From positions 1 to 64,000 of IMG/VR virus record IMGVR_UViG_3300029922_000001: a stretch of 64,000 bases of DNA, one strand, 5' to 3'. Made by a program: the position numbers and the translations under genes. This document shows positions 4,873 to 16,542 of this stretch, one piece after another (position 1 is the first letter of the stretch; each line of letters begins with the position of its first letter). Below the pieces are notes generated by a model. It did not search any database, had not been told where the DNA came from, and saw only the letters and a list, made by a program, of their open reading frames with translations.

Positions 4873-5756
4873 TGAAAAGATTTATTAAAGGATTGTATAA
4901 ACCAAATTACCCATGTGTTTTGTCAAGGTATTTTACAAATTTCAGTAAACTCAGAAAGATGAAAATTCTTTCTGAGGACTTCATAGTAGATTTCGCTGAT
5001 GATTTAGATTGGTTTTACCTAAGTGAAGAACAGCCTTTGTCTGAAGACTTCATTCGAAGATTTCAGGATAAAGTTAATTGGCATAATATATCTGAATCTC
5101 AGAAGTTATCAGAAGACTTTATTAGAGAATTTAAAGAAAAAGTTGATTGGTATTATATTTCAATGTATCAGAAGTTATCAGAAGATTTTATGAGGGAATT
5201 TCAAGATGAAATACACTGGCACTATGCGTGTAAACATCAAAAAATGTCCGTAGATTTCATGAGAGAGTTTAAGGATAATATGCTATGGGATTATGTATCA
5301 AAATATCAGAATTTATCAGAAAGCTTTAAACTTGAATTTAGTAATTTCCTTTTCAAGAGAATGTTAAATCCACAAAATAATTGGCTTTATCGCTCTGTGT
5401 ATTCTAAACGTCAGCACCTTTTGGATTATTATGAATTGGATGGTGATTATATTATCGCCTATAAAACTACTCGTAAAAATGGATATTCAGTATTCAATTT
5501 CCAGCATAGATATGAAGTTGGAAAGGAATATGAAGCACATTGTGATTTTAATGCCGATAATGAGGCTAGTTTTGGATTAAGTGCTTGGACTAGAGAAAAT
5601 GCATTAAGATATCATAGTCGTGGTGATCTTTATGAAGTTCGAATTCACCTTGATGATGCTGTTAAAGTGGATAGCTATCACAAGATTCGATGTTCAAAAT
5701 TCACAGTCGTAAGAAAACTAAAGATTAAACGTAGAGAAAGAAAAGCTTCAGACTAA
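4869..5756 (+). CDS. 22-aa Trp-repeat protein (LSEDFIREFxDKVxW) with conserved phage C-terminal domain
   Basis: About six tandem repeats followed by a YKTTR...YEVGKEYE...FGLS domain. Confidence 0.75.
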   Translation: MMKRFIKGLYKPNYPCVLSRYFTNFSKLRKMKILSEDFIVDFADDLDWFYLSEEQPLSEDFIRRFQDKVNWHNISESQKLSEDFIREFKEKVDWYYISMYQKLSEDFMREFQDEIHWHYACKHQKMSVDFMREFKDNMLWDYVSKYQNLSESFKLEFSNFLFKRMLNPQNNWLYRSVYSKRQHLLDYYELDGDYIIAYKTTRKNGYSVFNFQHRYEVGKEYEAHCDFNADNEASFGLSAWTRENALRYHSRGDLYEVRIHLDDAVKVDSYHKIRCSKFTVVRKLKIKRRERKASD

Positions 5757-6553
5757 TTAGTTTGAAGCTTTTCTTTGAATCTTGATATTACATTGAGTAA
5801 ATGTACATTGAGTTTACTATCAATGTCGAGTTCGTCCCAGAGAGGTTGTACTGATTCTGGATACTTTGCTTCATAAAGTGAAGCCGCAATAGCCGCATTT
5901 GTGTCTGTGTCTCCACCAAAGCTAATTGCTAATCTAATTACCTCTTCAATGCTAGTGCCGTTGAAAAACGAATGTAGAATGACTGGCATACAAGCTTCAC
6001 AGCTTGCCATGTGTAATTTACTAATTTTCTTCTTGTTAACTGTTTTCCATTTATAATCGCTAGTTCTTTTAATGAAGTCATTAATATACTTTTTACTTTC
6101 ACCATTGCGAAGATAAAAAATGGCTGCTGCAATTGTATTACTAGCCATTAAAGATTCTTCATGTCTATGTGTATACATAATTGATTTAGTAACATTAAGA
6201 AGAGTTCGTTCAATGGTTTTTTCGGTGTGTCCGATTGGACTAATTCGCATAATACAGCCATTGCCATAACTATCTAATTTAGTCATTTTTTCATGTGATG
6301 GGGTTGATGCCCATGTTCTAAATGCTTTACCATATCCTAGCTTCGGATAGACTTCGTAATATGCTTTATAGTATTCAGCAAAATTTTCTGAAGTGGGTTT
6401 TGGAAATTCTAAAAGAACTTCGGCTGTAGCACAAGTAAGTGCTGTATCGTCTGTAAAGTGAATATTGGGTGTATTCATTTCGAAATTAATATCGACTTCT
6501 GGTTGTGCTTCGAATACACTACCGATAATATCGCCTAAAATAGCTCCGCGCAT
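5753..6553 (-). CDS. ADP-ribosylglycohydrolase (DraG/ARH family)
   Basis: GAILGDIIGS, FTDDT, GNGCIMRISP and GGDTDT motifs; start moved to ATG 6553 (TATAAT-N6-ATG on the minus strand). Confidence 0.9.
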   Translation of the reverse strand: MRGAILGDIIGSVFEAQPEVDINFEMNTPNIHFTDDTALTCATAEVLLEFPKPTSENFAEYYKAYYEVYPKLGYGKAFRTWASTPSHEKMTKLDSYGNGCIMRISPIGHTEKTIERTLLNVTKSIMYTHRHEESLMASNTIAAAIFYLRNGESKKYINDFIKRTSDYKWKTVNKKKISKLHMASCEACMPVILHSFFNGTSIEEVIRLAISFGGDTDTNAAIAASLYEAKYPESVQPLWDELDIDSKLNVHLLNVISRFKEKLQTN

Positions 6554-6590
6554 TATGCTATTATACCTCAATATAAGATATAATAGAGGA

Positions 6591-7055
6591 ATGGAAACTA
6601 AACAAGTCATAGTAGTAAGAACACAATACCCAGATGGGAAAGGTGGAACTAAAAAGCTTAGAACGGGAAAACTCATAGCTCAAGCGGCTCATGCTTCAAT
6701 GTCTTTTTTGACGCGAAGAATTAATGCTAGATTAAATAGTGTTTCATATAAAGATGTTGATGGTGAGCCAATTGCATATATTGTTGAAGGACCATTGTAT
6801 GCAAATTTTTGTTTAACTCCAGAAGAAGAACATTGGTTAGATAATTCTTTTAAGAAAATTTGTGTGTATGTTAATTCTGAAGAAGAATTATTAGATATTT
6901 ATAATAAAGCTAAAGAAGCTGGATTAGAAGTACATCTTGTTGAGGATTCAGGGCTTACGGAATTTCATGGAGAGAAAACTAATACTTGTCTTGCAATTGG
7001 TCCACATGAATCTTCTCGAATTGATGTAATTACTGGTCATTTACCTTTATACTAA
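6591..7055 (+). CDS. pth2: peptidyl-tRNA hydrolase, Pth2 type
   Basis: KQVIVVR, GKLIAQAAHAS, KKICV, DSGLTE, TCLAIGP and IDxITGHLPL; start moved to ATG 6591. Confidence 0.92.
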   Translation: METKQVIVVRTQYPDGKGGTKKLRTGKLIAQAAHASMSFLTRRINARLNSVSYKDVDGEPIAYIVEGPLYANFCLTPEEEHWLDNSFKKICVYVNSEEELLDIYNKAKEAGLEVHLVEDSGLTEFHGEKTNTCLAIGPHESSRIDVITGHLPLY

Positions 7056-7296: not shown

Positions 7297-7323
7297 GACG
7301 ATTTACTAAAAATCAGATTCAAC

Positions 7324-7368
7324 GAAAAGGGTTCTCGCTAGAAAAAGTGAGAACCCTTTTCTGTTTTT
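7324..7368 (+). terminator. intrinsic terminator (attenuator) between leader peptide and tRNA array
   Basis: 16-bp stem GAAAAGGGTTCTCGCT/AGTGAGAACCCTTTTC, 6-nt loop, then TGTTTTT. Confidence 0.85.
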
Positions 7369-7384
7369 GAAAATCAAATAAAAT

Positions 7385-7447
7385 GGTAAAGTACATCCGG
7401 TGATGAACCCGTTCTGTGAAAACGGGTGTGGGGATCGGCTACCCCAC
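7385..7447 (+). pseudogene. truncated tRNA-His(GTG)-like element lacking the 3' acceptor strand
   Basis: D stem CATC/GATG, anticodon arm CCCGTT-CTGTGAA-AACGGG and a T-like hairpin; no complement to the 5' GGTAAAG before CGAGA. Confidence 0.55.
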
Positions 7448-7458
7448 GAGATAAAATA

Positions 7459-7530
7459 TCACAATATGGTGTTATGTTGACATACTTCCTGTGGTGGGAG
7501 AGATGTAAGTTCAATTCTTGCTGTTGTGAC
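7459..7530 (+). tRNA. tRNA-His(GTG)-like, irregular anticodon arm
   Basis: Acceptor TCACAATA/TGTTGTGA; T arm GTAAG-TTCAATT-CTTGC; anticodon region CTTCC-TGTGGT-GGGAG (TGG/Pro reading less likely). Confidence 0.6.
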
Positions 7531-7541
7531 CGAGATATATA

Positions 7542-7607
7542 CTAGGATGCCCAAGGTGGGAATTGCGGTTGTGACCCGCAATGACGGGATCGTTACCCGG
7601 TCCTAGA
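7542..7607 (+). tRNA. tRNA-His(GTG), compact
   Basis: Acceptor CTAGGAT/GTCCTAG; anticodon arm TTGCGG-TTGTGAC-CCGCAA; T arm CGGG-ATCGTTA-CCCG. Confidence 0.7.
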
Positions 7608-7619
7608 CGAGAAAAAAAT

Positions 7620-7701
7620 GGCGTAGCGATGCAGTTGGAGAGGCATGACGGTCTGTAAAATCGTTCCTTCGGGTGAATCGGTTCGAATCCGATATGCGCC
7701 A
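7620..7701 (+). tRNA. tRNA-Tyr(GTA)
   Basis: Anticodon loop CTGTAAA; long variable arm CCTTCGGG; T arm ATCGG-TTCGAAT-CCGAT. Confidence 0.85.
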
Positions 7702-7717
7702 CCGAGATAAAATAAAA

Positions 7718-7789
7718 CGGGATATAGCCAAGTGGTATGGCGCGAAGTTAGGGGCTTCGAGTTCTGGTGTTCGATTCACCATATCCCGA
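7718..7789 (+). tRNA. tRNA-Pro(AGG)
   Basis: Acceptor CGGGATA/TATCCCG plus A73; anticodon arm CGAAG-TTAGGGG-CTTCG; T arm TGGTG-TTCGATT-CACCA. Confidence 0.85.
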
Positions 7790-7800
7790 CGAGAATAAAT

Positions 7801-7880
7801 GGACGTATCGCATAGCGGCAATTGCGGAAGGCTGTAACCCTTCTCCTTCGGGTTCGTAAGTTCGAGTCTTACTGCGTCCA
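7801..7880 (+). tRNA. tRNA-Tyr(GTA)
   Basis: Acceptor GGACGTA/TGCGTCC; anticodon arm GAAGG-CTGTAAC-CCTTC; variable arm CCTTCGGG. Confidence 0.9.
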
Positions 7881-7890
7881 CGAGATAAAT

Positions 7891-7962
7891 CTAGTTGTAT
7901 ATCAATTGGTAGATTTCGCCGTTTGGATCGGTGAGGCTGGAGGTTCGAGTCCTCTCAACTAC
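7891..7962 (+). tRNA. tRNA-Pro(TGG), 3' end lacks G72/A73
   Basis: Anticodon arm CGCCG-TTTGGAT-CGGTG; T arm GGAGG-TTCGAGT-CCTCT; acceptor TAGTTG/CAACTA. Confidence 0.75.
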
Positions 7963-7974
7963 GAGATAAAATAT

Positions 7975-8085
7975 GGCGCGTATAGCAGTTACGGTTTTAC
8001 GGTTAGCTGCGCGGTCTGTTAAGTATGGGTATTTAACAAAACCGATGCCGAAAGGCTGATATGGATTCGACTTCCTCACGCGCCA
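7975..8085 (+). tRNA. type II tRNA-like RNA (probably Tyr) with an 18-nt insertion in the anticodon loop
   Basis: Acceptor GGCGCGT/ACGCGCC plus A; variable arm GCC-GAAA-GGC; anticodon region CGGT-CTGT[18 nt]AAA-ACCG. Confidence 0.6.
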
Positions 8086-8173
8086 CGAGATGTATGACGG
8101 TAATTGGCTGCCGCCTGGTTTTGGAAACCAGAGTTATAAAAATACACTGCAAGTTCGAATCTTGTCATCTCGC
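8086..8173 (+). tRNA. tRNA-Pro(TGG) with long variable region
   Basis: Acceptor CGAGATG/CATCTCG; anticodon arm CTGGT-TTTGGAA-ACCAG; T arm GCAAG-TTCGAAT-CTTGT. Confidence 0.75.
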
Positions 8174-8887
8174 GAGAATATTATTTGTTTTTCTTTGAAT
8201 TATTGTTTGAATTAAATCCACAACAATCTTTTTATATTTTTCCTTACTGTTAGTGTTTAAATACTTGCAAGACGATGAATCTATAATACATAATTCAATA
8301 TTTTGTTGATAACAATTTATTATTTTATTATTATCATTATTTTTAATTTTTTCAAATTTATTATTTCCATAAATTGGTTCATAGTGAAATATGCCATTTA
8401 GTTCAATAGCAAATTTAAGCTCTGGAAAATAAAAGTCTAATTCAGAATTAATAATAGATTTATCATTACATATTAATAATAAATCAGGGTATAAAATTTT
8501 AATTTGTTCTTCTAAGTATATTTCTAATTTGGATCTTCTAGTTCCATGAGTTTTATGTTTATTGTTATAAGTTGCTGAACATGATTTACTGCAAAATACA
8601 TTTTTTGTTTTACTTTTATTTAATTCTCCGTTATTTCTTTTTGTGTATTTATTACACTCTTTACAAAAAGTATTTATTGATCCATGACCACGATCTAAAT
8701 TATTTTTATTTGCTACACACTTCATACTACATACCATTGGTCTATTTAATTTATAACTTTCATTAATTTTTGACTTAGCTCTATTGAAAATATTATTACA
8801 CTGAGGACAAATTAATAAAACTAAGTCGTTTCCTCTTAAATTACATATATATTCATTAGGTATATTATTAGCATATGGTATATTCAT
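8165..8887 (-). CDS. free-standing putative homing endonuclease (Cys-rich Zn modules + Vsr/DUF559-like PD-(D/E)xK domain)
   Basis: CxxC...CSxxC repeats; ELDFYFPELKFAIELNGIFHY; start moved to ATG 8887. Confidence 0.7.
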   Translation of the reverse strand: MNIPYANNIPNEYICNLRGNDLVLLICPQCNNIFNRAKSKINESYKLNRPMVCSMKCVANKNNLDRGHGSINTFCKECNKYTKRNNGELNKSKTKNVFCSKSCSATYNNKHKTHGTRRSKLEIYLEEQIKILYPDLLLICNDKSIINSELDFYFPELKFAIELNGIFHYEPIYGNNKFEKIKNNDNNKIINCYQQNIELCIIDSSSCKYLNTNSKEKYKKIVVDLIQTIIQRKTNNILAR

Positions 8888-9006
8888 ACTATATATTTCG
8901 AATATACAATTTCGACTCCTGCTACATAGATTTAAATTACTCAATTAATAAACCACCGTGTGGTTATTGGGCAAAACAAAAAGCTTTATAGGAGTTATAA
9001 TAAGAC

Positions 9007-12671: not shown

Positions 12672-13289
12672 ATGAAAACGTACCCATCTATTGTTACACT
12701 AAATAAAAATAAAAGCGAACCTATAGAAATGTGGGTATTTGATAAGTTGGATGGTTCTAACTTGCGTTTTGAATGGCATCGTAAGCGTGGATGGGGTAAA
12801 TTTGGCACTAGAACCCGTTTATTTGACCGTACAGACCCTACATTTGGTTGTGCCATTGATTTGTTCTTAAACAAATATAGTGAGGATTTAGAGAGGATTT
12901 TTAGAAAACAAAACTTCGAAGAAACTACAGTATTTTGTGAGTTCTGGGGACAGAGTTCTTTTGCTGGGCAGCACGTTGAAAGCGAACCTAAAAACGTCAC
13001 TTTGTTTGATGTTGATGTATTCAAAAAGTGTATTATTGGACCAAGACAATTTTTGGATTTATTCGGTCATTTAGATCATGCACCATATTTAGGAAAACAT
13101 ATATGGGATCAAGATTTTATTCAGGCAGTATACAATCAAGAAATTGAAGGTATGTCATTAGAAGGTGTTGTTGGCAAGGCTGGCGAAGGTCATCATTTGA
13201 AAATGTACAAGGCAAAAACAAAAGAATGGTTGGATTTGATTCGTGCTAGATACGATGAAGCTACTGCTAATCAGTTAATCAATAGTTGA
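12672..13289 (+). CDS. RNA ligase (Rnl2-like nucleotidyltransferase domain)
   Basis: Motif I KLDGSN, then EFWG, LFDV, EGVV and KAK; start moved to ATG 12672 (TGcTATAAT-N6-ATG). Confidence 0.75.
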   Translation: MKTYPSIVTLNKNKSEPIEMWVFDKLDGSNLRFEWHRKRGWGKFGTRTRLFDRTDPTFGCAIDLFLNKYSEDLERIFRKQNFEETTVFCEFWGQSSFAGQHVESEPKNVTLFDVDVFKKCIIGPRQFLDLFGHLDHAPYLGKHIWDQDFIQAVYNQEIEGMSLEGVVGKAGEGHHLKMYKAKTKEWLDLIRARYDEATANQLINS

Positions 13290-14725: not shown

Positions 14726-14805
14726 AATATGGACTGATTGAATAGGTTTATCGCTTATCTAAAACGATCCTTCGGGATTTAACCTTTCAGACTTTTGTTC
14801 ATGTT
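14726..14805 (+). ncRNA. candidate Y-like RNA 2 (Ro60-associated)
   Basis: Terminal stem AATATGGAC/GTTCATGTT; inner stem AGGTT/AACCT; apical hairpins ATCG/CGAT (loop with TTATCTA) and ATCC-TTCG-GGAT. Confidence 0.5.
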
Positions 14806-14817
14806 TATTTTAAAAGG

Positions 14818-14857
14818 GCAAGTGCTTCACTGGATAGTGAGGAACTTGCTTTTTTTT
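14818..14857 (+). terminator. intrinsic terminator between candidate Y RNAs and ro60
   Basis: GCAAGT-GCTTCACT-GGAT-AGTGAGG-AACTTGC followed by T8. Confidence 0.75.
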
Positions 14858-14877
14858 CGAGTTAGGAGAATAAAATA

Positions 14878-16542
14878 ATGAGTAAAATCGCACAATACGT
14901 AGGAAATCGTAATAAAAACAAAAACAAGATCGTCAAACCATATATCTCTCAGGGACAACCTTATGACGAAACACAAGTTAAGAACTCCAATGGAGGATAC
15001 GTATATAAAGTCGGTAATTGGGATCAATTAGTAAGATTTCTCATTTTGGGAACAATTTCAGGAACTTACTACATCAAAGAAAGTGAACTAACTGTTCTAA
15101 ATTATGATGTCATCTTGGATTGTCTCAAAGAAGATGGCGTAAGAGTTGTAAATGAAATTTTGCGTGTGTCTGAAGGTGGATTGGCACCTAAAAATGATTT
15201 TGCAGTTTTTGCACTTGCAGTTGCTGCCGCACATGGTAATGAACAAACTAAACAACTAGCTTATGAAGTCTTGCCAAGAGTATGCCGTATTGCAACACAT
15301 TTATTCCAATTTTTGGAAGATTCTAAAGCATTTAGAGGACGTGGTAACGGTTTTAATCGTGCTATTCGTCGTTGGTACACTAATAAAACCATTGATCAAC
15401 AAGCTTATCAAATGGTTAAATATCGTTCACGAAACAGTTGGTCACACCGTGACGTGTTGAGAACAATACGTATCAAACCAGAAAACGTTGAAGCATCCGC
15501 TTTATATGGTTGGGCTGTTACTGGAGAATGGAAGCCAGGTAAGATTGAAATTAATGTTGATGGTCATGTACTATTACTATCAAATGGCTTTGATGTTGCT
15601 AAGCCAAAGATTATTGAAGGATTTGAAAAGTCCCAAGCTGCTACTTCTACTAGTGAACTAGTTAAGGTAATTAAGCAATATGATCTTACATGGGAAGCTG
15701 TGCCAACACAGTATCTTAAAGATAAGAGTGTATGGGAAGCTTTGCTATCCAACACTCCCCCAATTGCTTTGATGCGTAATCTTGGTAATATGTCTAGTGC
15801 CGGTGTCTTTGATGCTGGTGAGTGGGATAATACCAAATTAGCAATTGATACTTTAACTAATGTTGAAAAACTTAGAAAGAATCATTGTCACCCTATGCAG
15901 TCTGTAATTGCACAAATTACTTATGCTCATGGTGGAGGATTTAAGGGAAGTAACACTTGGGCTGTGAACCCCAAATTAGTCGATGCATTAAATGATTCGT
16001 TCTATGCATCAATGCAAGCAATTGTGCCAACTGGTAAGAAATTCCTAGTAGGTGTTGATGAATCTCAGTCTATGACTCAGGCTAGTGCTGTTTCAGGATT
16101 AAACTGTAAAGAAGCTGCGGCTATTATGGCATTAACTACTTACGTTGCGGAACCTAATTGTCAGGTTATCTTCTTCGATACCAAATATCGTGAAGAAGAA
16201 AAATTGAGTAAGCACATGAGTTTAAATGACGCTAAGAAACTCGCTCGTGATGGTGGAGGTACTAATTTGAACTTACCTATGCAATATGCATTGGATAAAA
16301 AGATTAAAGATATTGATGTCTTCGTTGTCTTCACTGACAATGAGACATATGGTAATGGACGACATACTCAAGACTTATTTAATGAATATCGTAATACATA
16401 TAATGCAAACGCCAAATTGATTGTATGTTCTATGATGGCTAATGTTTATACTGTAGGAGATATTAAAGATCCACAAATTCTTCAAGTAGTAGGTTTGGAT
16501 GCATCGCTCCCGAAAATAATTAGCTGTTTTGTTTTAGCGTAA
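14878..16542 (+). CDS. rsr: Ro60/Rsr TROVE-domain RNA-binding protein
   Basis: QVKNSNGGYVY, LVRFLILG..GTYY, KYRSRNSWSHRDVLR, ALMRNLG; vWA motifs DxSxSM, GGT, VFTDNET and VVGLD; AGGAG SD. Confidence 0.95.
   Translation: MSKIAQYVGNRNKNKNKIVKPYISQGQPYDETQVKNSNGGYVYKVGNWDQLVRFLILGTISGTYYIKESELTVLNYDVILDCLKEDGVRVVNEILRVSEGGLAPKNDFAVFALAVAAAHGNEQTKQLAYEVLPRVCRIATHLFQFLEDSKAFRGRGNGFNRAIRRWYTNKTIDQQAYQMVKYRSRNSWSHRDVLRTIRIKPENVEASALYGWAVTGEWKPGKIEINVDGHVLLLSNGFDVAKPKIIEGFEKSQAATSTSELVKVIKQYDLTWEAVPTQYLKDKSVWEALLSNTPPIALMRNLGNMSSAGVFDAGEWDNTKLAIDTLTNVEKLRKNHCHPMQSVIAQITYAHGGGFKGSNTWAVNPKLVDALNDSFYASMQAIVPTGKKFLVGVDESQSMTQASAVSGLNCKEAAAIMALTTYVAEPNCQVIFFDTKYREEEKLSKHMSLNDAKKLARDGGGTNLNLPMQYALDKKIKDIDVFVVFTDNETYGNGRHTQDLFNEYRNTYNANAKLIVCSMMANVYTVGDIKDPQILQVVGLDASLPKIISCFVLA

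What the first reader, a model, noticed from the sequence alone, without database searches (positions are those of the whole stretch)
7975..8085. tRNA-like RNA with an 18-nt hairpin-forming insertion inside the anticodon loop
Seen: perfect acceptor stem, enlarged D arm and type II variable arm. The anticodon region reads CGGT-CTGT[TAAGTATGGGTATTTAAC]AAA-ACCG. Removing 8020-8037 restores CTGTAAA, the loop of tRNA-Tyr at 7620. Unspliced, the region forms a 9-bp hairpin (TGTTAAGTA/TATTTAACA) capped by TGGG that buries the anticodon. Alternative readings are Asn(GTT) (the leader has 8 Asn codons) or an extended arm presenting GGG (Pro). Inference: a protein-spliced mini-intron or a nuclease-protected stored tRNA; the RNA ligase at 12672 is a candidate for joining.
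Basis: partly seen in the sequence, partly recalled or inferred. Interest (0 to 1): 0.62.

Follow-up and report, generated by a model that had tools for sequence, protein, structure and literature searches.

The report
Hairpin-split tRNA-Tyr gene in megaphage
A 441-kb peat phage carries a tRNA-Tyr gene copy whose anticodon is split by an 18-base hairpin, one of a recurring class of such split tRNA genes in huge phages that probably need an unknown cut-and-rejoin step, though this copy also carries other defects.

Summary
Window 7975-8085 (+) is a tRNA-shaped unit in a phage tRNA array: a 7-bp acceptor stem, an oversized D arm, a class II variable arm, and an 18-nt insert (8020-8037) that extends the anticodon stem into a 9-bp hairpin.

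- **Identity:** the 21 nt flanking the insert occur uninterrupted in tRNA-Tyr(GTA)-like genes of 6 other viral contigs and 6 bacterial MAG contigs. The gene is therefore a tRNA-Tyr split between U35 and A36. The Asn and Pro readings fail.
- **Not unique:** seven more tRNA genes in this 441-kb genome carry 14-31-nt hairpin inserts in the anticodon loop. An unrelated 350-kb phage has a tRNA-Trp built the same way; it has an insert-free homolog elsewhere and is that phage's only Trp gene.
- **Shared geometry:** in every resolvable case the last two insert bases pair with the last two 5'-exon bases, which would give a 2-nt 3' stagger.
- **Enzymes:** the phage encodes Rnl1-like and other RNA ligases and Tpt1. 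No EndA, RtcB or RNase III was found.
- **Limits:** splicing is inferred, because no RNA data exist.
- **This copy:** it also has an 8-nt D-loop duplication and a 3-bp T stem, and is redundant with two intact tRNA-Tyr genes. It may be decaying.

Closest precedent: the "enigmatic introns" of Lak megaphage tRNAs.

The parts
7963..7974 (+). Spacer and leader carrying the array's trailer motif (GAGATAAAAT)
   Evidence: CGAGA[AT][AT]A[AT] occurs 37 times in the genome, 24 of them at tRNA unit ends. CGAGA is depleted overall, about 180 seen against about 516 expected.
7975..8085 (+). The tRNA-Tyr(GUA)-derived unit with the split anticodon (111 nt including discriminator A8085)
   Evidence: Cloverleaf minimum-energy fold with z = -3.15. 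Half-by-half alignment to uninterrupted phage tRNA-Tyr genes.
7989..8004 (+). Exact tandem duplication TTACGGTT x2 that enlarges the D loop to 18 nt
   Evidence: Read from the sequence. It appears as a 9-column gap against all homologs.
8011..8045 (+). Extended anticodon arm: stem GCGGT/ACCGA (27:43 is G.A, as in the homologs), bulged C32, 9-bp hairpin, unpaired A37 and A38
   Evidence: Fold results.
8020..8037 (+). 18-nt insert between U35 and A36 of the anticodon. Its last two bases (A8036, C8037) pair with U35 and G34.
   Evidence: The flanks GCGGTCTGT and AAAACCGATGCC are contiguous in 6 viral contigs and 6 bacterial MAG contigs.
8046..8060 (+). Class II variable arm (GCC-GAAA-GGC)
   Evidence: Sequence and fold. 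It aligns with the variable arms of the homologous Tyr genes.
8061..8077 (+). Weak T arm: loop TTCGACT, stem only GGA/TCC
   Evidence: Sequence. The homologs have 5-bp stems.
7620..7703 (+). Intact tRNA-Tyr(GTA) in the same array
   Evidence: ARAGORN.
7801..7881 (+). Second intact tRNA-Tyr(GTA) in the same array
   Evidence: ARAGORN and Rfam, 50.4 bits.
7890..7964 (+). tRNA-Pro(TGG) just upstream. The order Pro-Tyr-Asn is conserved in other phage arrays.
12636..13289 (+). RNA ligase (PF09414 / phrog_548), one of three RNA ligases in the genome

Best explanation
**What it is (shown).** The locus is a copy of a phage-lineage tRNA-Tyr(GUA) gene, and it sits as a normal unit in a tRNA array. Its anticodon is split between U35 and A36 by an 18-nt insert. 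In the RNA, the insert and the flanking loop bases prolong the anticodon stem into a 9-bp hairpin that buries G34-U35-A36, so the unprocessed molecule could not decode.

**The class it belongs to (shown).** It is one of a recurring class of hairpin-split tRNA genes in huge phages.

**How it probably works (inferred).**
- The hairpin acts as a protein-dependent mini-intron.
- An endonuclease cuts both strands of the extension helix with a 2-nt 3' stagger, which is the geometry RNase III produces. The enzyme is unidentified; host RNase III or a phage nuclease are candidates.
- The cut would leave U35-3'OH and 5'P-A36, held together by the U33-A36 pair.
- A phage RNA ligase, most plausibly the Rnl1-type enzyme that seals anticodon loops, would then close the 7-nt loop CUGUAAA.

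**This copy (shown lesions, inferred consequence).** It also carries a D-loop duplication and a 3-bp T stem, and it duplicates two intact tRNA-Tyr genes. It is probably a weakened or decaying member of the class.
For: **Identity as tRNA-Tyr**
- The 9 + 12 nt flanking the insert are contiguous in tRNA-Tyr(GTA)-like genes of 6 viral contigs and 6 bacterial MAG contigs.
- The two halves align with those genes separately.
- The gene order Pro(TGG)-Tyr-Asn is shared.
- The body is class II with A73.

**Array membership**
- The trailer motif flanks the unit on both sides.

**The class**
- Seven more units in this genome carry 14-31-nt inserts in the anticodon loop. Four of them pass Rfam's tRNA threshold.
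- All eight arms fold as long hairpins, z = -2.05 to -4.92 against loop shuffles.

**Geometry**
- The boundaries can be fixed independently in four cases: homolog alignment for Tyr and Trp, identity elements for Leu and Gly.
- In all four, exactly the last two 5'-exon bases pair with the last two insert bases.
- The rule also gives Cys, Thr and Lys readings that agree with each gene's discriminator base.

**Signs of function**
- A tRNA-Trp in an unrelated 350-kb phage has the same architecture. It scores 41.4 bits in Rfam.
- It differs from a homolog in a 411-kb phage by a clean 28-nt insertion at 35|36.
- It is the only Trp gene among that phage's 57 tRNAs, which otherwise cover all other amino acids.

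**Enzymes**
- The genome has an Rnl1-like ligase (PF09511), two PF09414 ligases (one fused to an HNH domain), and Tpt1 beside a tRNA array.

**Precedent**
- Lak megaphage tRNAs have 'enigmatic introns' (PMC6784885).
Against: - No RNA data exist for this phage, so neither transcription nor splicing has been shown.
- No endonuclease has been identified. The genome has no hit to tRNA_int_endo, RtcB, the RNase III family PF14622 or the 2H family PF13563.
- The helices are short for RNase III: 3-6 bp lie above the proposed cuts.
- Two of the eight units in this genome do not fit the geometric rule.
- The candidate fails every tRNA detector, and it carries three lesions relative to its family.
- Two intact tRNA-Tyr genes make it dispensable.
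- No close relative of this phage is available, so conservation or covariation of this particular insert could not be tested.
Confidence: 0.45

Rival explanations
1. It is a plain pseudogene. A redundant third tRNA-Tyr copy is accumulating insertions and substitutions, and the hairpin has no function in this copy.
For: - Relative to its family it carries three independent lesions: an 8-nt tandem duplication, an 18-nt insert, and T-stem mismatches at 49 and 50.
- No tRNA detector accepts it.
- Two intact Tyr(GTA) genes lie in the same array.
- Its hairpin is the least significant of the eight: 29 of 1000 shuffles fold as well.
- A homing endonuclease gene lies next to it, which could drive error-prone repair.
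Against: - The acceptor stem is perfect and both flanking trailer motifs are intact.
- The whole fold is far more stable than chance.
- The insert has the same position and geometry as inserts in otherwise well-formed tRNAs, here and in another phage.
- A random 18-nt insertion would rarely pair with the anticodon over 9 bp.
Confidence: 0.3
2. It works unspliced as a tRNA mimic. Processed at both ends like a tRNA but unable to decode, it could act as a decoy or sponge for host tRNA-targeting nucleases or tRNA-binding proteins, or as a partner RNA for the phage Ro60 protein.
For: - tRNA-like ends and processing signals are present.
- The anticodon is buried.
- The weak T stem would disfavour use in translation.
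- A Ro60/TROVE-vWA gene lies 6.8 kb downstream on the same strand.
- The variable arm contains GCCGAAAG, which matches the GNCGAAN0-1G motif of bacterial Y RNAs (PMC4201824).
- Phage tRNAs are known to counter anticodon nucleases (PMC10264068, PMC11555353; abstracts only, listed).
Against: - No Y RNA or YrlA match appears in Rfam.
- The topology is not that of YrlA, whose ends lie in the Ro-binding stem.
- The motif sits in a tetraloop and would occur by chance in about 3% of 111-nt sequences.
- Insert length and sequence differ widely among class members, so they do not present one common ligand.
- The sole-Trp case in the 350-kb phage argues for a decoding role.
Confidence: 0.15
3. The insert is selected at the DNA level. 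It would break the recognition site of a homing endonuclease that targets tRNA genes, so the RNA hairpin is a by-product, tolerated either because it is removed or because the copy is spare.
For: - ORF 8165-8944 (-) is a zinc-finger homing-endonuclease-like protein (phrog_9084, phrog_3339, phrog_559).
- Its homologs always lie inside phage tRNA arrays.
- Free-standing homing endonucleases in phage tRNA clusters are known, for example T4 SegB (my own knowledge, not checked here).
Against: - No target site is known.
- The inserts lie in five different arrays of this genome, and most are far from this gene.
- This idea does not explain why every insert pairs with its own anticodon.
Confidence: 0.1

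Closest known systems
'Enigmatic introns' in Lak megaphage tRNAs (Devoto et al. 2019, PMC6784885)
   Same: Both occur in a huge phage. A tRNA gene, Tyr(GTA) among them, is interrupted in the anticodon loop by a sequence that is not a group I intron. Removal is unexplained, and several tRNAs per genome are affected.
   Different: The Lak inserts shown in that paper's Table S6 are 79-93 nt, were placed at 37/38 by a eukaryote-mode predictor, and contain a T-arm-like element. Here the inserts are 14-31 nt, are simple hairpins, lie inside the anticodon (35|36 or 36|37), and share a 2-nt stagger geometry.
Archaeal and eukaryal pre-tRNA introns cut by the splicing endonuclease
   Same: Both are short, protein-dependent introns in the anticodon loop, and in both the anticodon pairs with the intron.
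   Different: There is no bulge-helix-bulge motif, only a single bulged C32. The position is not 37/38. No endonuclease homolog was found. The host is bacterial: tRNA-Tyr is class II and the genome carries a tmRNA.
Group I introns in bacterial tRNA anticodon loops (e.g. tRNA-Leu UAA)
   Same: Both interrupt a bacterial-type tRNA gene inside or next to the anticodon.
   Different: 18 nt cannot hold a group I catalytic core, and no Rfam intron family matches.
T4-type anticodon-loop repair (Pnkp plus Rnl1) and Tpt1-dependent ligation
   Same: The phage encodes an Rnl1-family ligase and Tpt1, enzymes that in other systems rejoin broken anticodon loops and finish tRNA splicing.
   Different: Those are repair systems for damage inflicted by the host. 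Here the break would be programmed by the gene itself. The 350-kb phage with the split Trp gene has no Tpt1.
Bacterial Y RNAs (YrlA), tRNA mimics bound by Ro60
   Same: Both are tRNA-like non-decoding RNAs in a genome that encodes Ro60.
   Different: The topology differs, no model matches, and the unit is 6.8 kb from the Ro60 gene.

Membership tests
Canonical tRNA (Rfam RF00005 / ARAGORN) | Recognised by covariance or heuristic tRNA models | tested here: not met
   No call by ARAGORN in any mode. No Rfam hit at E <= 10, even when searched alone. Relaxed ARAGORN settings give only a nonsensical Leu model.
Canonical tRNA (Rfam RF00005 / ARAGORN) | 7-bp acceptor stem, discriminator base, T loop TTCRANY | tested here: met
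   GGCGCGT/ACGCGCC, A73, T loop TTCGACT.
Canonical tRNA (Rfam RF00005 / ARAGORN) | 7-nt anticodon loop, 5-bp T stem, D loop of about 7-11 nt | tested here: not met
   The loop is 25 nt, the T stem 3 bp, and the D loop 18 nt.
Phage-lineage tRNA-Tyr(GUA) with GCGGU/ACCGA anticodon stem | Shared anticodon stem, loop and variable-arm start; class II arm; A73; position after tRNA-Pro(TGG) | tested here: met
   The 21-nt flank is identical once the insert is set aside. The halves align. Gene order agrees.
Hairpin-split tRNA genes of huge phages (class defined here) | Insert within positions 35-37 that prolongs the anticodon stem; its last 2 nt pair with the last 2 nt of the 5' exon; removal leaves a 7-nt loop that fits the tRNA body | tested here: met
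   Insert at 35|36; A8036 and C8037 pair with U35 and G34; removal leaves CTGTAAA. The same holds for five other units in this genome and for the Trp gene of the 350-kb phage.
Hairpin-split tRNA genes of huge phages (class defined here) | The insert is removed from the RNA | not testable with these tools
   No RNA run holds this phage.
Archaeal/eukaryal BHB-intron pre-tRNA | Bulge-helix-bulge motif (two 3-nt bulges separated by 4 bp) at the splice sites | tested here: not met
   There is a single bulged C on the 5' side and AA on the 3' side.
Archaeal/eukaryal BHB-intron pre-tRNA | Splicing endonuclease (tRNA_int_endo) available | tested here: not met
   PF01974 has no hit in the 441-kb genome. 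The host's enzyme set is unknown.
Group I intron in a tRNA gene | Catalytic core P3-P9, usually more than 200 nt | tested here: not met
   The insert is 18 nt, and no Rfam intron family matches.
Lak-type megaphage tRNA introns | Huge phage, with an otherwise recognisable tRNA interrupted in the anticodon loop | tested here: met
   The record is a 441,498-bp virus, and the interruption is shown above.
Lak-type megaphage tRNA introns | Insert of about 80-90 nt with an internal T-arm-like element, conserved between genomes | tested here: not met
   The insert is 18 nt and a simple hairpin. Conservation between genomes could not be tested.
YrlA / Y RNA | Within 4 kb of Ro60; matches a Y RNA model; 5' and 3' ends form the Ro-binding stem with GNCGAAN0-1G | tested here: not met
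   The unit is 6.8 kb from Ro60 and matches no model. The motif is present, but in the variable-arm tetraloop (PMC4201824).

The most novel reading that the evidence does not exclude
Huge phages of bacteria may run a protein-only tRNA splicing pathway of their own. Short hairpin introns placed inside the anticodon would be cut with a 2-nt 3' stagger (RNase III-like) and resealed by a phage Rnl1-type ligase. That would give the phage tRNAs that stay inert, and invisible to anticodon nucleases and homing endonucleases, until they are processed. It would be a third kind of tRNA splicing and the first protein-dependent one in the bacterial world.
Probability: 0.33. Interest if true: 0.85.

Novelty: new variant of a known kind. 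Interest (0 to 1): 0.62.

Why it matters
Bacteria and their viruses are thought to have only self-splicing introns in tRNA genes. A class of 14-31-nt hairpins that split the anticodon cannot self-splice.

- **If they are removed:** there must be an unrecognised cut-and-seal pathway. Phage Rnl1 and Tpt1, so far seen only as repair enzymes, would gain a programmed substrate.
- **If they are not removed:** huge phages make sets of anticodon-masked tRNA look-alikes, and their use would need explaining.
- **Annotation:** such genes are missed or misnamed by standard annotation. Here Leu was called Arg, Gly was called Pro, Trp was called Pro, and Tyr was not called at all. Phage tRNA inventories and inferences about codon use are therefore biased.
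- **Testability:** the shared 2-nt stagger rule makes the Lak 'enigmatic intron' problem directly testable.

Tried and rejected
- **Asn(GTT) and Pro(GGG) readings.** Rejected: they conflict with the class II body, with A73 and with the uninterrupted homologs.
- **Y RNA or another known RNA family.** Rfam gave nothing for the unit.
- **tmRNA.** Rejected for the region 7301-8300, which holds the unit.
- **Close relatives, to test conservation of the insert.** The DNA polymerase is at most 29% identical to anything found and PTH2 at most 51%. The neighbouring endonuclease is 48-70% identical, but no split tRNA lies beside its homologs. Exact patterns from the unit and its neighbour found nothing. 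A BLAST against cultured phages matched only the ordinary tRNAs.
- **Population variation.** None was seen in four peat runs.
- **RNA evidence.** No RNA run holds the phage.
- **Body similarity to tRNAs of the same genome by global alignment.** Uninformative.
- **Alternative genetic code.** The standard code already gives high coding density, so no other code was used.
- **Tpt1 as a marker of the class.** Rejected: the 350-kb phage with the split Trp gene lacks it. A search for Tpt1 neighbourhoods in other phages found no relatives.
- **Split versions in bacterial genomes.** Pattern hits with a gap greater than 0 were chance matches inside ORFs.
- **Palindromic 'P-nucleotide' origin of the insert.** Rejected by inspection: the insert ends are not the reverse complement of the flanks.
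- **Joined sequence.** The joined (spliced) sequence was never folded or searched. The exons were compared separately by reference, and the flanks were searched as a gapped pattern.

Full report
**Setting**

The window is the first 64 kb of a 441,498-bp virus record, 33% G+C, recovered from peat metagenomes. It encodes a phage DNA polymerase, terminase, helicase and RecJ. It also has a tmRNA and about 30 tRNA genes. Its tRNA-Tyr genes are class II, so the host is a bacterium. The standard genetic code already gives high coding density.

Positions 7460-8173 (+) form a tRNA array. Each unit is followed by N73, then C or CC, then GAGA[AT][AT]A[AT]. The motif CGAGA[AT][AT]A[AT] occurs 37 times in the genome, and 24 of those are at tRNA unit ends. 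CGAGA is otherwise depleted, about 180 seen against about 516 expected. The candidate has this signal on both sides, so it is a regular member of the array.

**Checking the observation**

- The acceptor stem is 7975-7981 with 8078-8084, and A73 is at 8085.
- The anticodon stem is 8012-8015 with 8041-8044.
- The loop reads CTGT, then an 18-nt insert (8020-8037), then AAA.
- The 9-bp hairpin is 8017-8025 with 8030-8038, capped by TGGG.
- The variable arm is GCC-GAAA-GGC.

The 111-nt minimum-energy fold is this cloverleaf. Its energy is -41.3 kcal/mol, against -30.5 +/- 3.4 for shuffles, so z = -3.15 and 0 of 200 shuffles do as well.

Three points are new. The large D loop is an exact tandem duplication, TTACGGTT x2 (7989-8004). 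The T stem has only three pairs. No tRNA detector or Rfam family accepts the unit, even when it is searched alone at E <= 10. Contigs from two independent peat runs are identical over the unit, so this is real DNA.

**What gene it is**

A gapped pattern made from the nine bases before the insert and the twelve after it found those 21 bases contiguous in six other viral contigs and six bacterial MAG contigs. In each case they lie inside tRNA-Tyr(GTA)-like genes. These genes share the G27.A43 'mismatch' and the start of the variable arm with the candidate.

In three of the viral contigs the order is Pro(TGG), Tyr, Asn(GTT). In the window the order is Pro(TGG) 7890-7964, the candidate, then a second odd unit.

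I aligned the two halves separately by reference. I did not fold or search the joined sequence. Relative to this family the candidate differs by three things: the D-loop duplication, the 18-nt insert, and two changes at positions 49 and 50 that unpair the T stem.

The insertion point is unique, between U35 and A36. The Asn and Pro readings are not supported.

**It is one of a class**

ARAGORN in intron mode, plus my own acceptor/T-arm scan over the whole genome, found seven more tRNA units with 14-31 extra bases in the anticodon loop, spread over five other arrays. Four of them pass Rfam's tRNA gathering score despite the insert. In all eight, the extra bases prolong the anticodon stem into a long hairpin. 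Against 1000 shuffles of each loop, z runs from -2.05 (the candidate) to -4.92, and 0 to 29 shuffles fold as well. In five of the eight, C32 is bulged and the helix starts at U33.

ARAGORN's names for these genes are mostly wrong. Using body class, discriminator base and the need for U33 and a purine at 37, the readings are:

| ARAGORN call | Position | Better reading | Basis |
|---|---|---|---|
| 'Arg' | 275383-275484 | Leu(UAG) | class II body, A73 |
| 'Pro' | 245891-245993 | Gly(GCC) | U73, G1-C72, C2-G71, G3-C70 |
| 'Val' | 253296-253394 | Thr(UGU) | U73, as in two of the phage's three other Thr genes |
| 'Gln' | 172713-172808 | Lys(UUU) | A73 |
| 'Cys' | 251434-251524 | Cys(GCA) | U73 |

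**A common geometry**

Boundaries can be fixed independently of the helix in four cases: Tyr here and Trp (below) by alignment to insert-free homologs, and Leu and Gly by identity elements. In all four:
- The last two bases of the insert pair with the last two bases of the 5' exon.
- The first base of the 3' exon is an A paired with U33 or U34.
- No 3'-exon base pairs with the insert.

Cutting at the two boundaries would therefore leave a 2-nt 3' overhang on each product, as RNase III does. The same rule gives the Cys, Thr and Lys readings above. Staggers of 0 or 4 give anticodons that contradict the bodies. Two units (389592-389680 and 247524-247620) do not fit cleanly.

**Independent support from other phages**

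I scanned the tRNA regions of five other 310-536-kb phages.
- A 350-kb phage with terminal repeats has a 102-nt tRNA with the same architecture as the candidate: CCGGU, bulged C, a helix starting at U33, AA, then ACCG. It has A1-U72, G73 and an encoded CCA end, and scores 41.4 bits in Rfam with a 30-nt gap in the anticodon loop.
- The rule reads it as tRNA-Trp(CCA).
- A 411-kb phage holds an uninterrupted homolog with the same D arm, anticodon stem and variable loop but co-varied acceptor and T stems. The two differ by one clean 28-nt insertion between CTCC and AAA, that is at 35|36.
- Among the 57 tRNAs of the 350-kb phage, every amino acid except Trp has an ordinary gene. The split gene is the only Trp gene.

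That is hard to square with a dead gene, and it is the best indirect argument that such inserts are removed.

**Enzymes**

| Searched | Result |
|---|---|
| tRNA_int_endo (PF01974) | no hit |
| RtcB (PF01139) | no hit |
| RNase III family (PF14622) | no hit |
| 2H family (PF13563) | no hit |
| Rnl1-type ligase (PF09511) | present, 402770-403822 |
| HNH-PF09414 ligase fusion | present, 306286-307314 |
| Tpt1/KptA | present, 253942-254439, directly upstream of the Thr/Ser array that holds a split gene |

Tpt1 sits beside DUF4326, IF3, PARP and NADAR genes. Tpt1 in jumbo phages has been read as RNA repair (PMC9503650). The 350-kb phage has Rnl1-like and PF09414 ligases but no Tpt1, so Tpt1 is not required for the class. 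A cut leaving 5'-P and 3'-OH, sealed by an Rnl1-type enzyme, is the simplest scheme. The nuclease is unknown.

**Precedent**

Devoto et al. 2019 reported that Lak megaphages encode tRNAs 'with enigmatic introns', including Tyr(GTA), and suggested that these may be common in large phages (PMC6784885). The two Lak inserts shown there are 79 and 93 nt and carry a T-arm-like element. No mechanism has been published in the library I could search. The present inserts are a shorter and simpler variant with a definable geometry.

**Verdict on this copy**

I put the probability that it is a tRNA-Tyr-derived, hairpin-split unit of this class at about 0.9. I put the probability that the class is spliced at about 0.5, because no RNA evidence exists.

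This copy has extra lesions and two intact paralogs, so a decaying or re-purposed copy is a serious rival (about 0.3). An unspliced mimic or decoy role is less likely (about 0.15). It would draw on the nearby Ro60 gene and on a chance-level match to the Y RNA motif in the variable arm. Selection at the DNA level against the neighbouring homing endonuclease is an open side hypothesis (about 0.1).

Noticed in passing
window 8165-8944 (-): This is a zinc-finger plus homing-endonuclease-like protein (phrog_9084, phrog_3339, phrog_559) with no Pfam hit. It has the conserved motif ELDFYFP...AIELNG..HYEP. In all ten related contigs that extend beyond the gene, tRNA genes flank it. Its 3' end usually abuts tRNA-Asn(GTT). 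This recalls SegB in the T4 tRNA cluster.
   Followed up: partly
window 8086-8173 (+): This is a second odd tRNA-like unit. Its 5' acceptor strand CGAGATG is itself the trailer motif of the candidate. Its anticodon arm can form 7 bp with a 3-nt loop, or 5 bp with the loop UUUGGAA. It has a 17-nt variable region and a good T arm. Only relaxed ARAGORN calls it (as Pro TGG), and its only Rfam match is a weak one to tRNA-Sec (24 bits).
   Followed up: partly
whole genome; window 7447, 7608, 7703, 7790, 7881, 7962, 8173: The motif CGAGA[AT][AT]A[AT] follows nearly every tRNA unit (24 of its 37 occurrences). CGAGA is about threefold depleted elsewhere. It is probably a 3'-processing signal specific to this phage.
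   Followed up: partly
window 14878-16542 (+): A Ro60 homolog (TROVE plus vWA) is present, but Rfam finds no Y RNA nearby. A terminator-like hairpin lies at 14803-14866, just upstream.
   Followed up: partly
G000 253942-254439 (-) and neighbours (L104): Tpt1/KptA lies directly upstream of a tRNA array, in a cluster with DUF4326, IF3, a WGR-PARP protein and NADAR. In the window, an ADP-ribosylglycohydrolase (5753-6676) and PTH2 (6465-7055) lie upstream of the tRNA array that starts at 7460.
   Followed up: partly
G000 306286-307314 (+) (L111:856-1884): A single protein fuses an HNH nuclease domain to a PF09414 RNA ligase domain, so it could both cut and seal.
   Followed up: no
G000 172370-172703 and 389309-389483 (+): Two non-tRNA stretches, about 330 nt and 175 nt, sit inside tRNA arrays. 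The 175-nt one is bounded on both sides by the trailer motif. Neither matches any Rfam family at gathering score. They may be unknown structured RNAs.
   Followed up: partly
G000 172128-172200 and 353602-353673 (+): There are two tRNAs with anticodon CTA (amber suppressors). Reading TAG as sense lengthens ORFs mainly at 420-441 kb, which suggests local rather than genome-wide recoding.
   Followed up: partly
G000 274893-274973 and 274987-275068 (-): A pair of class I tRNA-like units has anticodon arms that can close to 6-8 bp with a 3-nt loop. Their possible anticodons, AAG and UAG, are Leu anticodons on a non-Leu body.
   Followed up: no
L126:1185-1327 (-) and L126:2562-2702 (-) (536-kb phage): These tRNAs have normal anticodon loops but carry inserts of about 60 nt in the variable region. 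This is another kind of oversized tRNA in huge phages, and ARAGORN mislabels the inserts as anticodon-loop introns.
   Followed up: no
L141, L142, L144, L145, L146, L152-L158, L163: A widespread phage lineage of tRNA-Tyr(GTA) genes has a G27.A43 pair and, in many members, a non-canonical T loop (ATCGTTA). ARAGORN misses most of them.
   Followed up: partly
window 7460-7529 (+): The first tRNA of the array scores 35.8 bits in Rfam, but ARAGORN does not call it, and its anticodon loop lacks U33.
   Followed up: no
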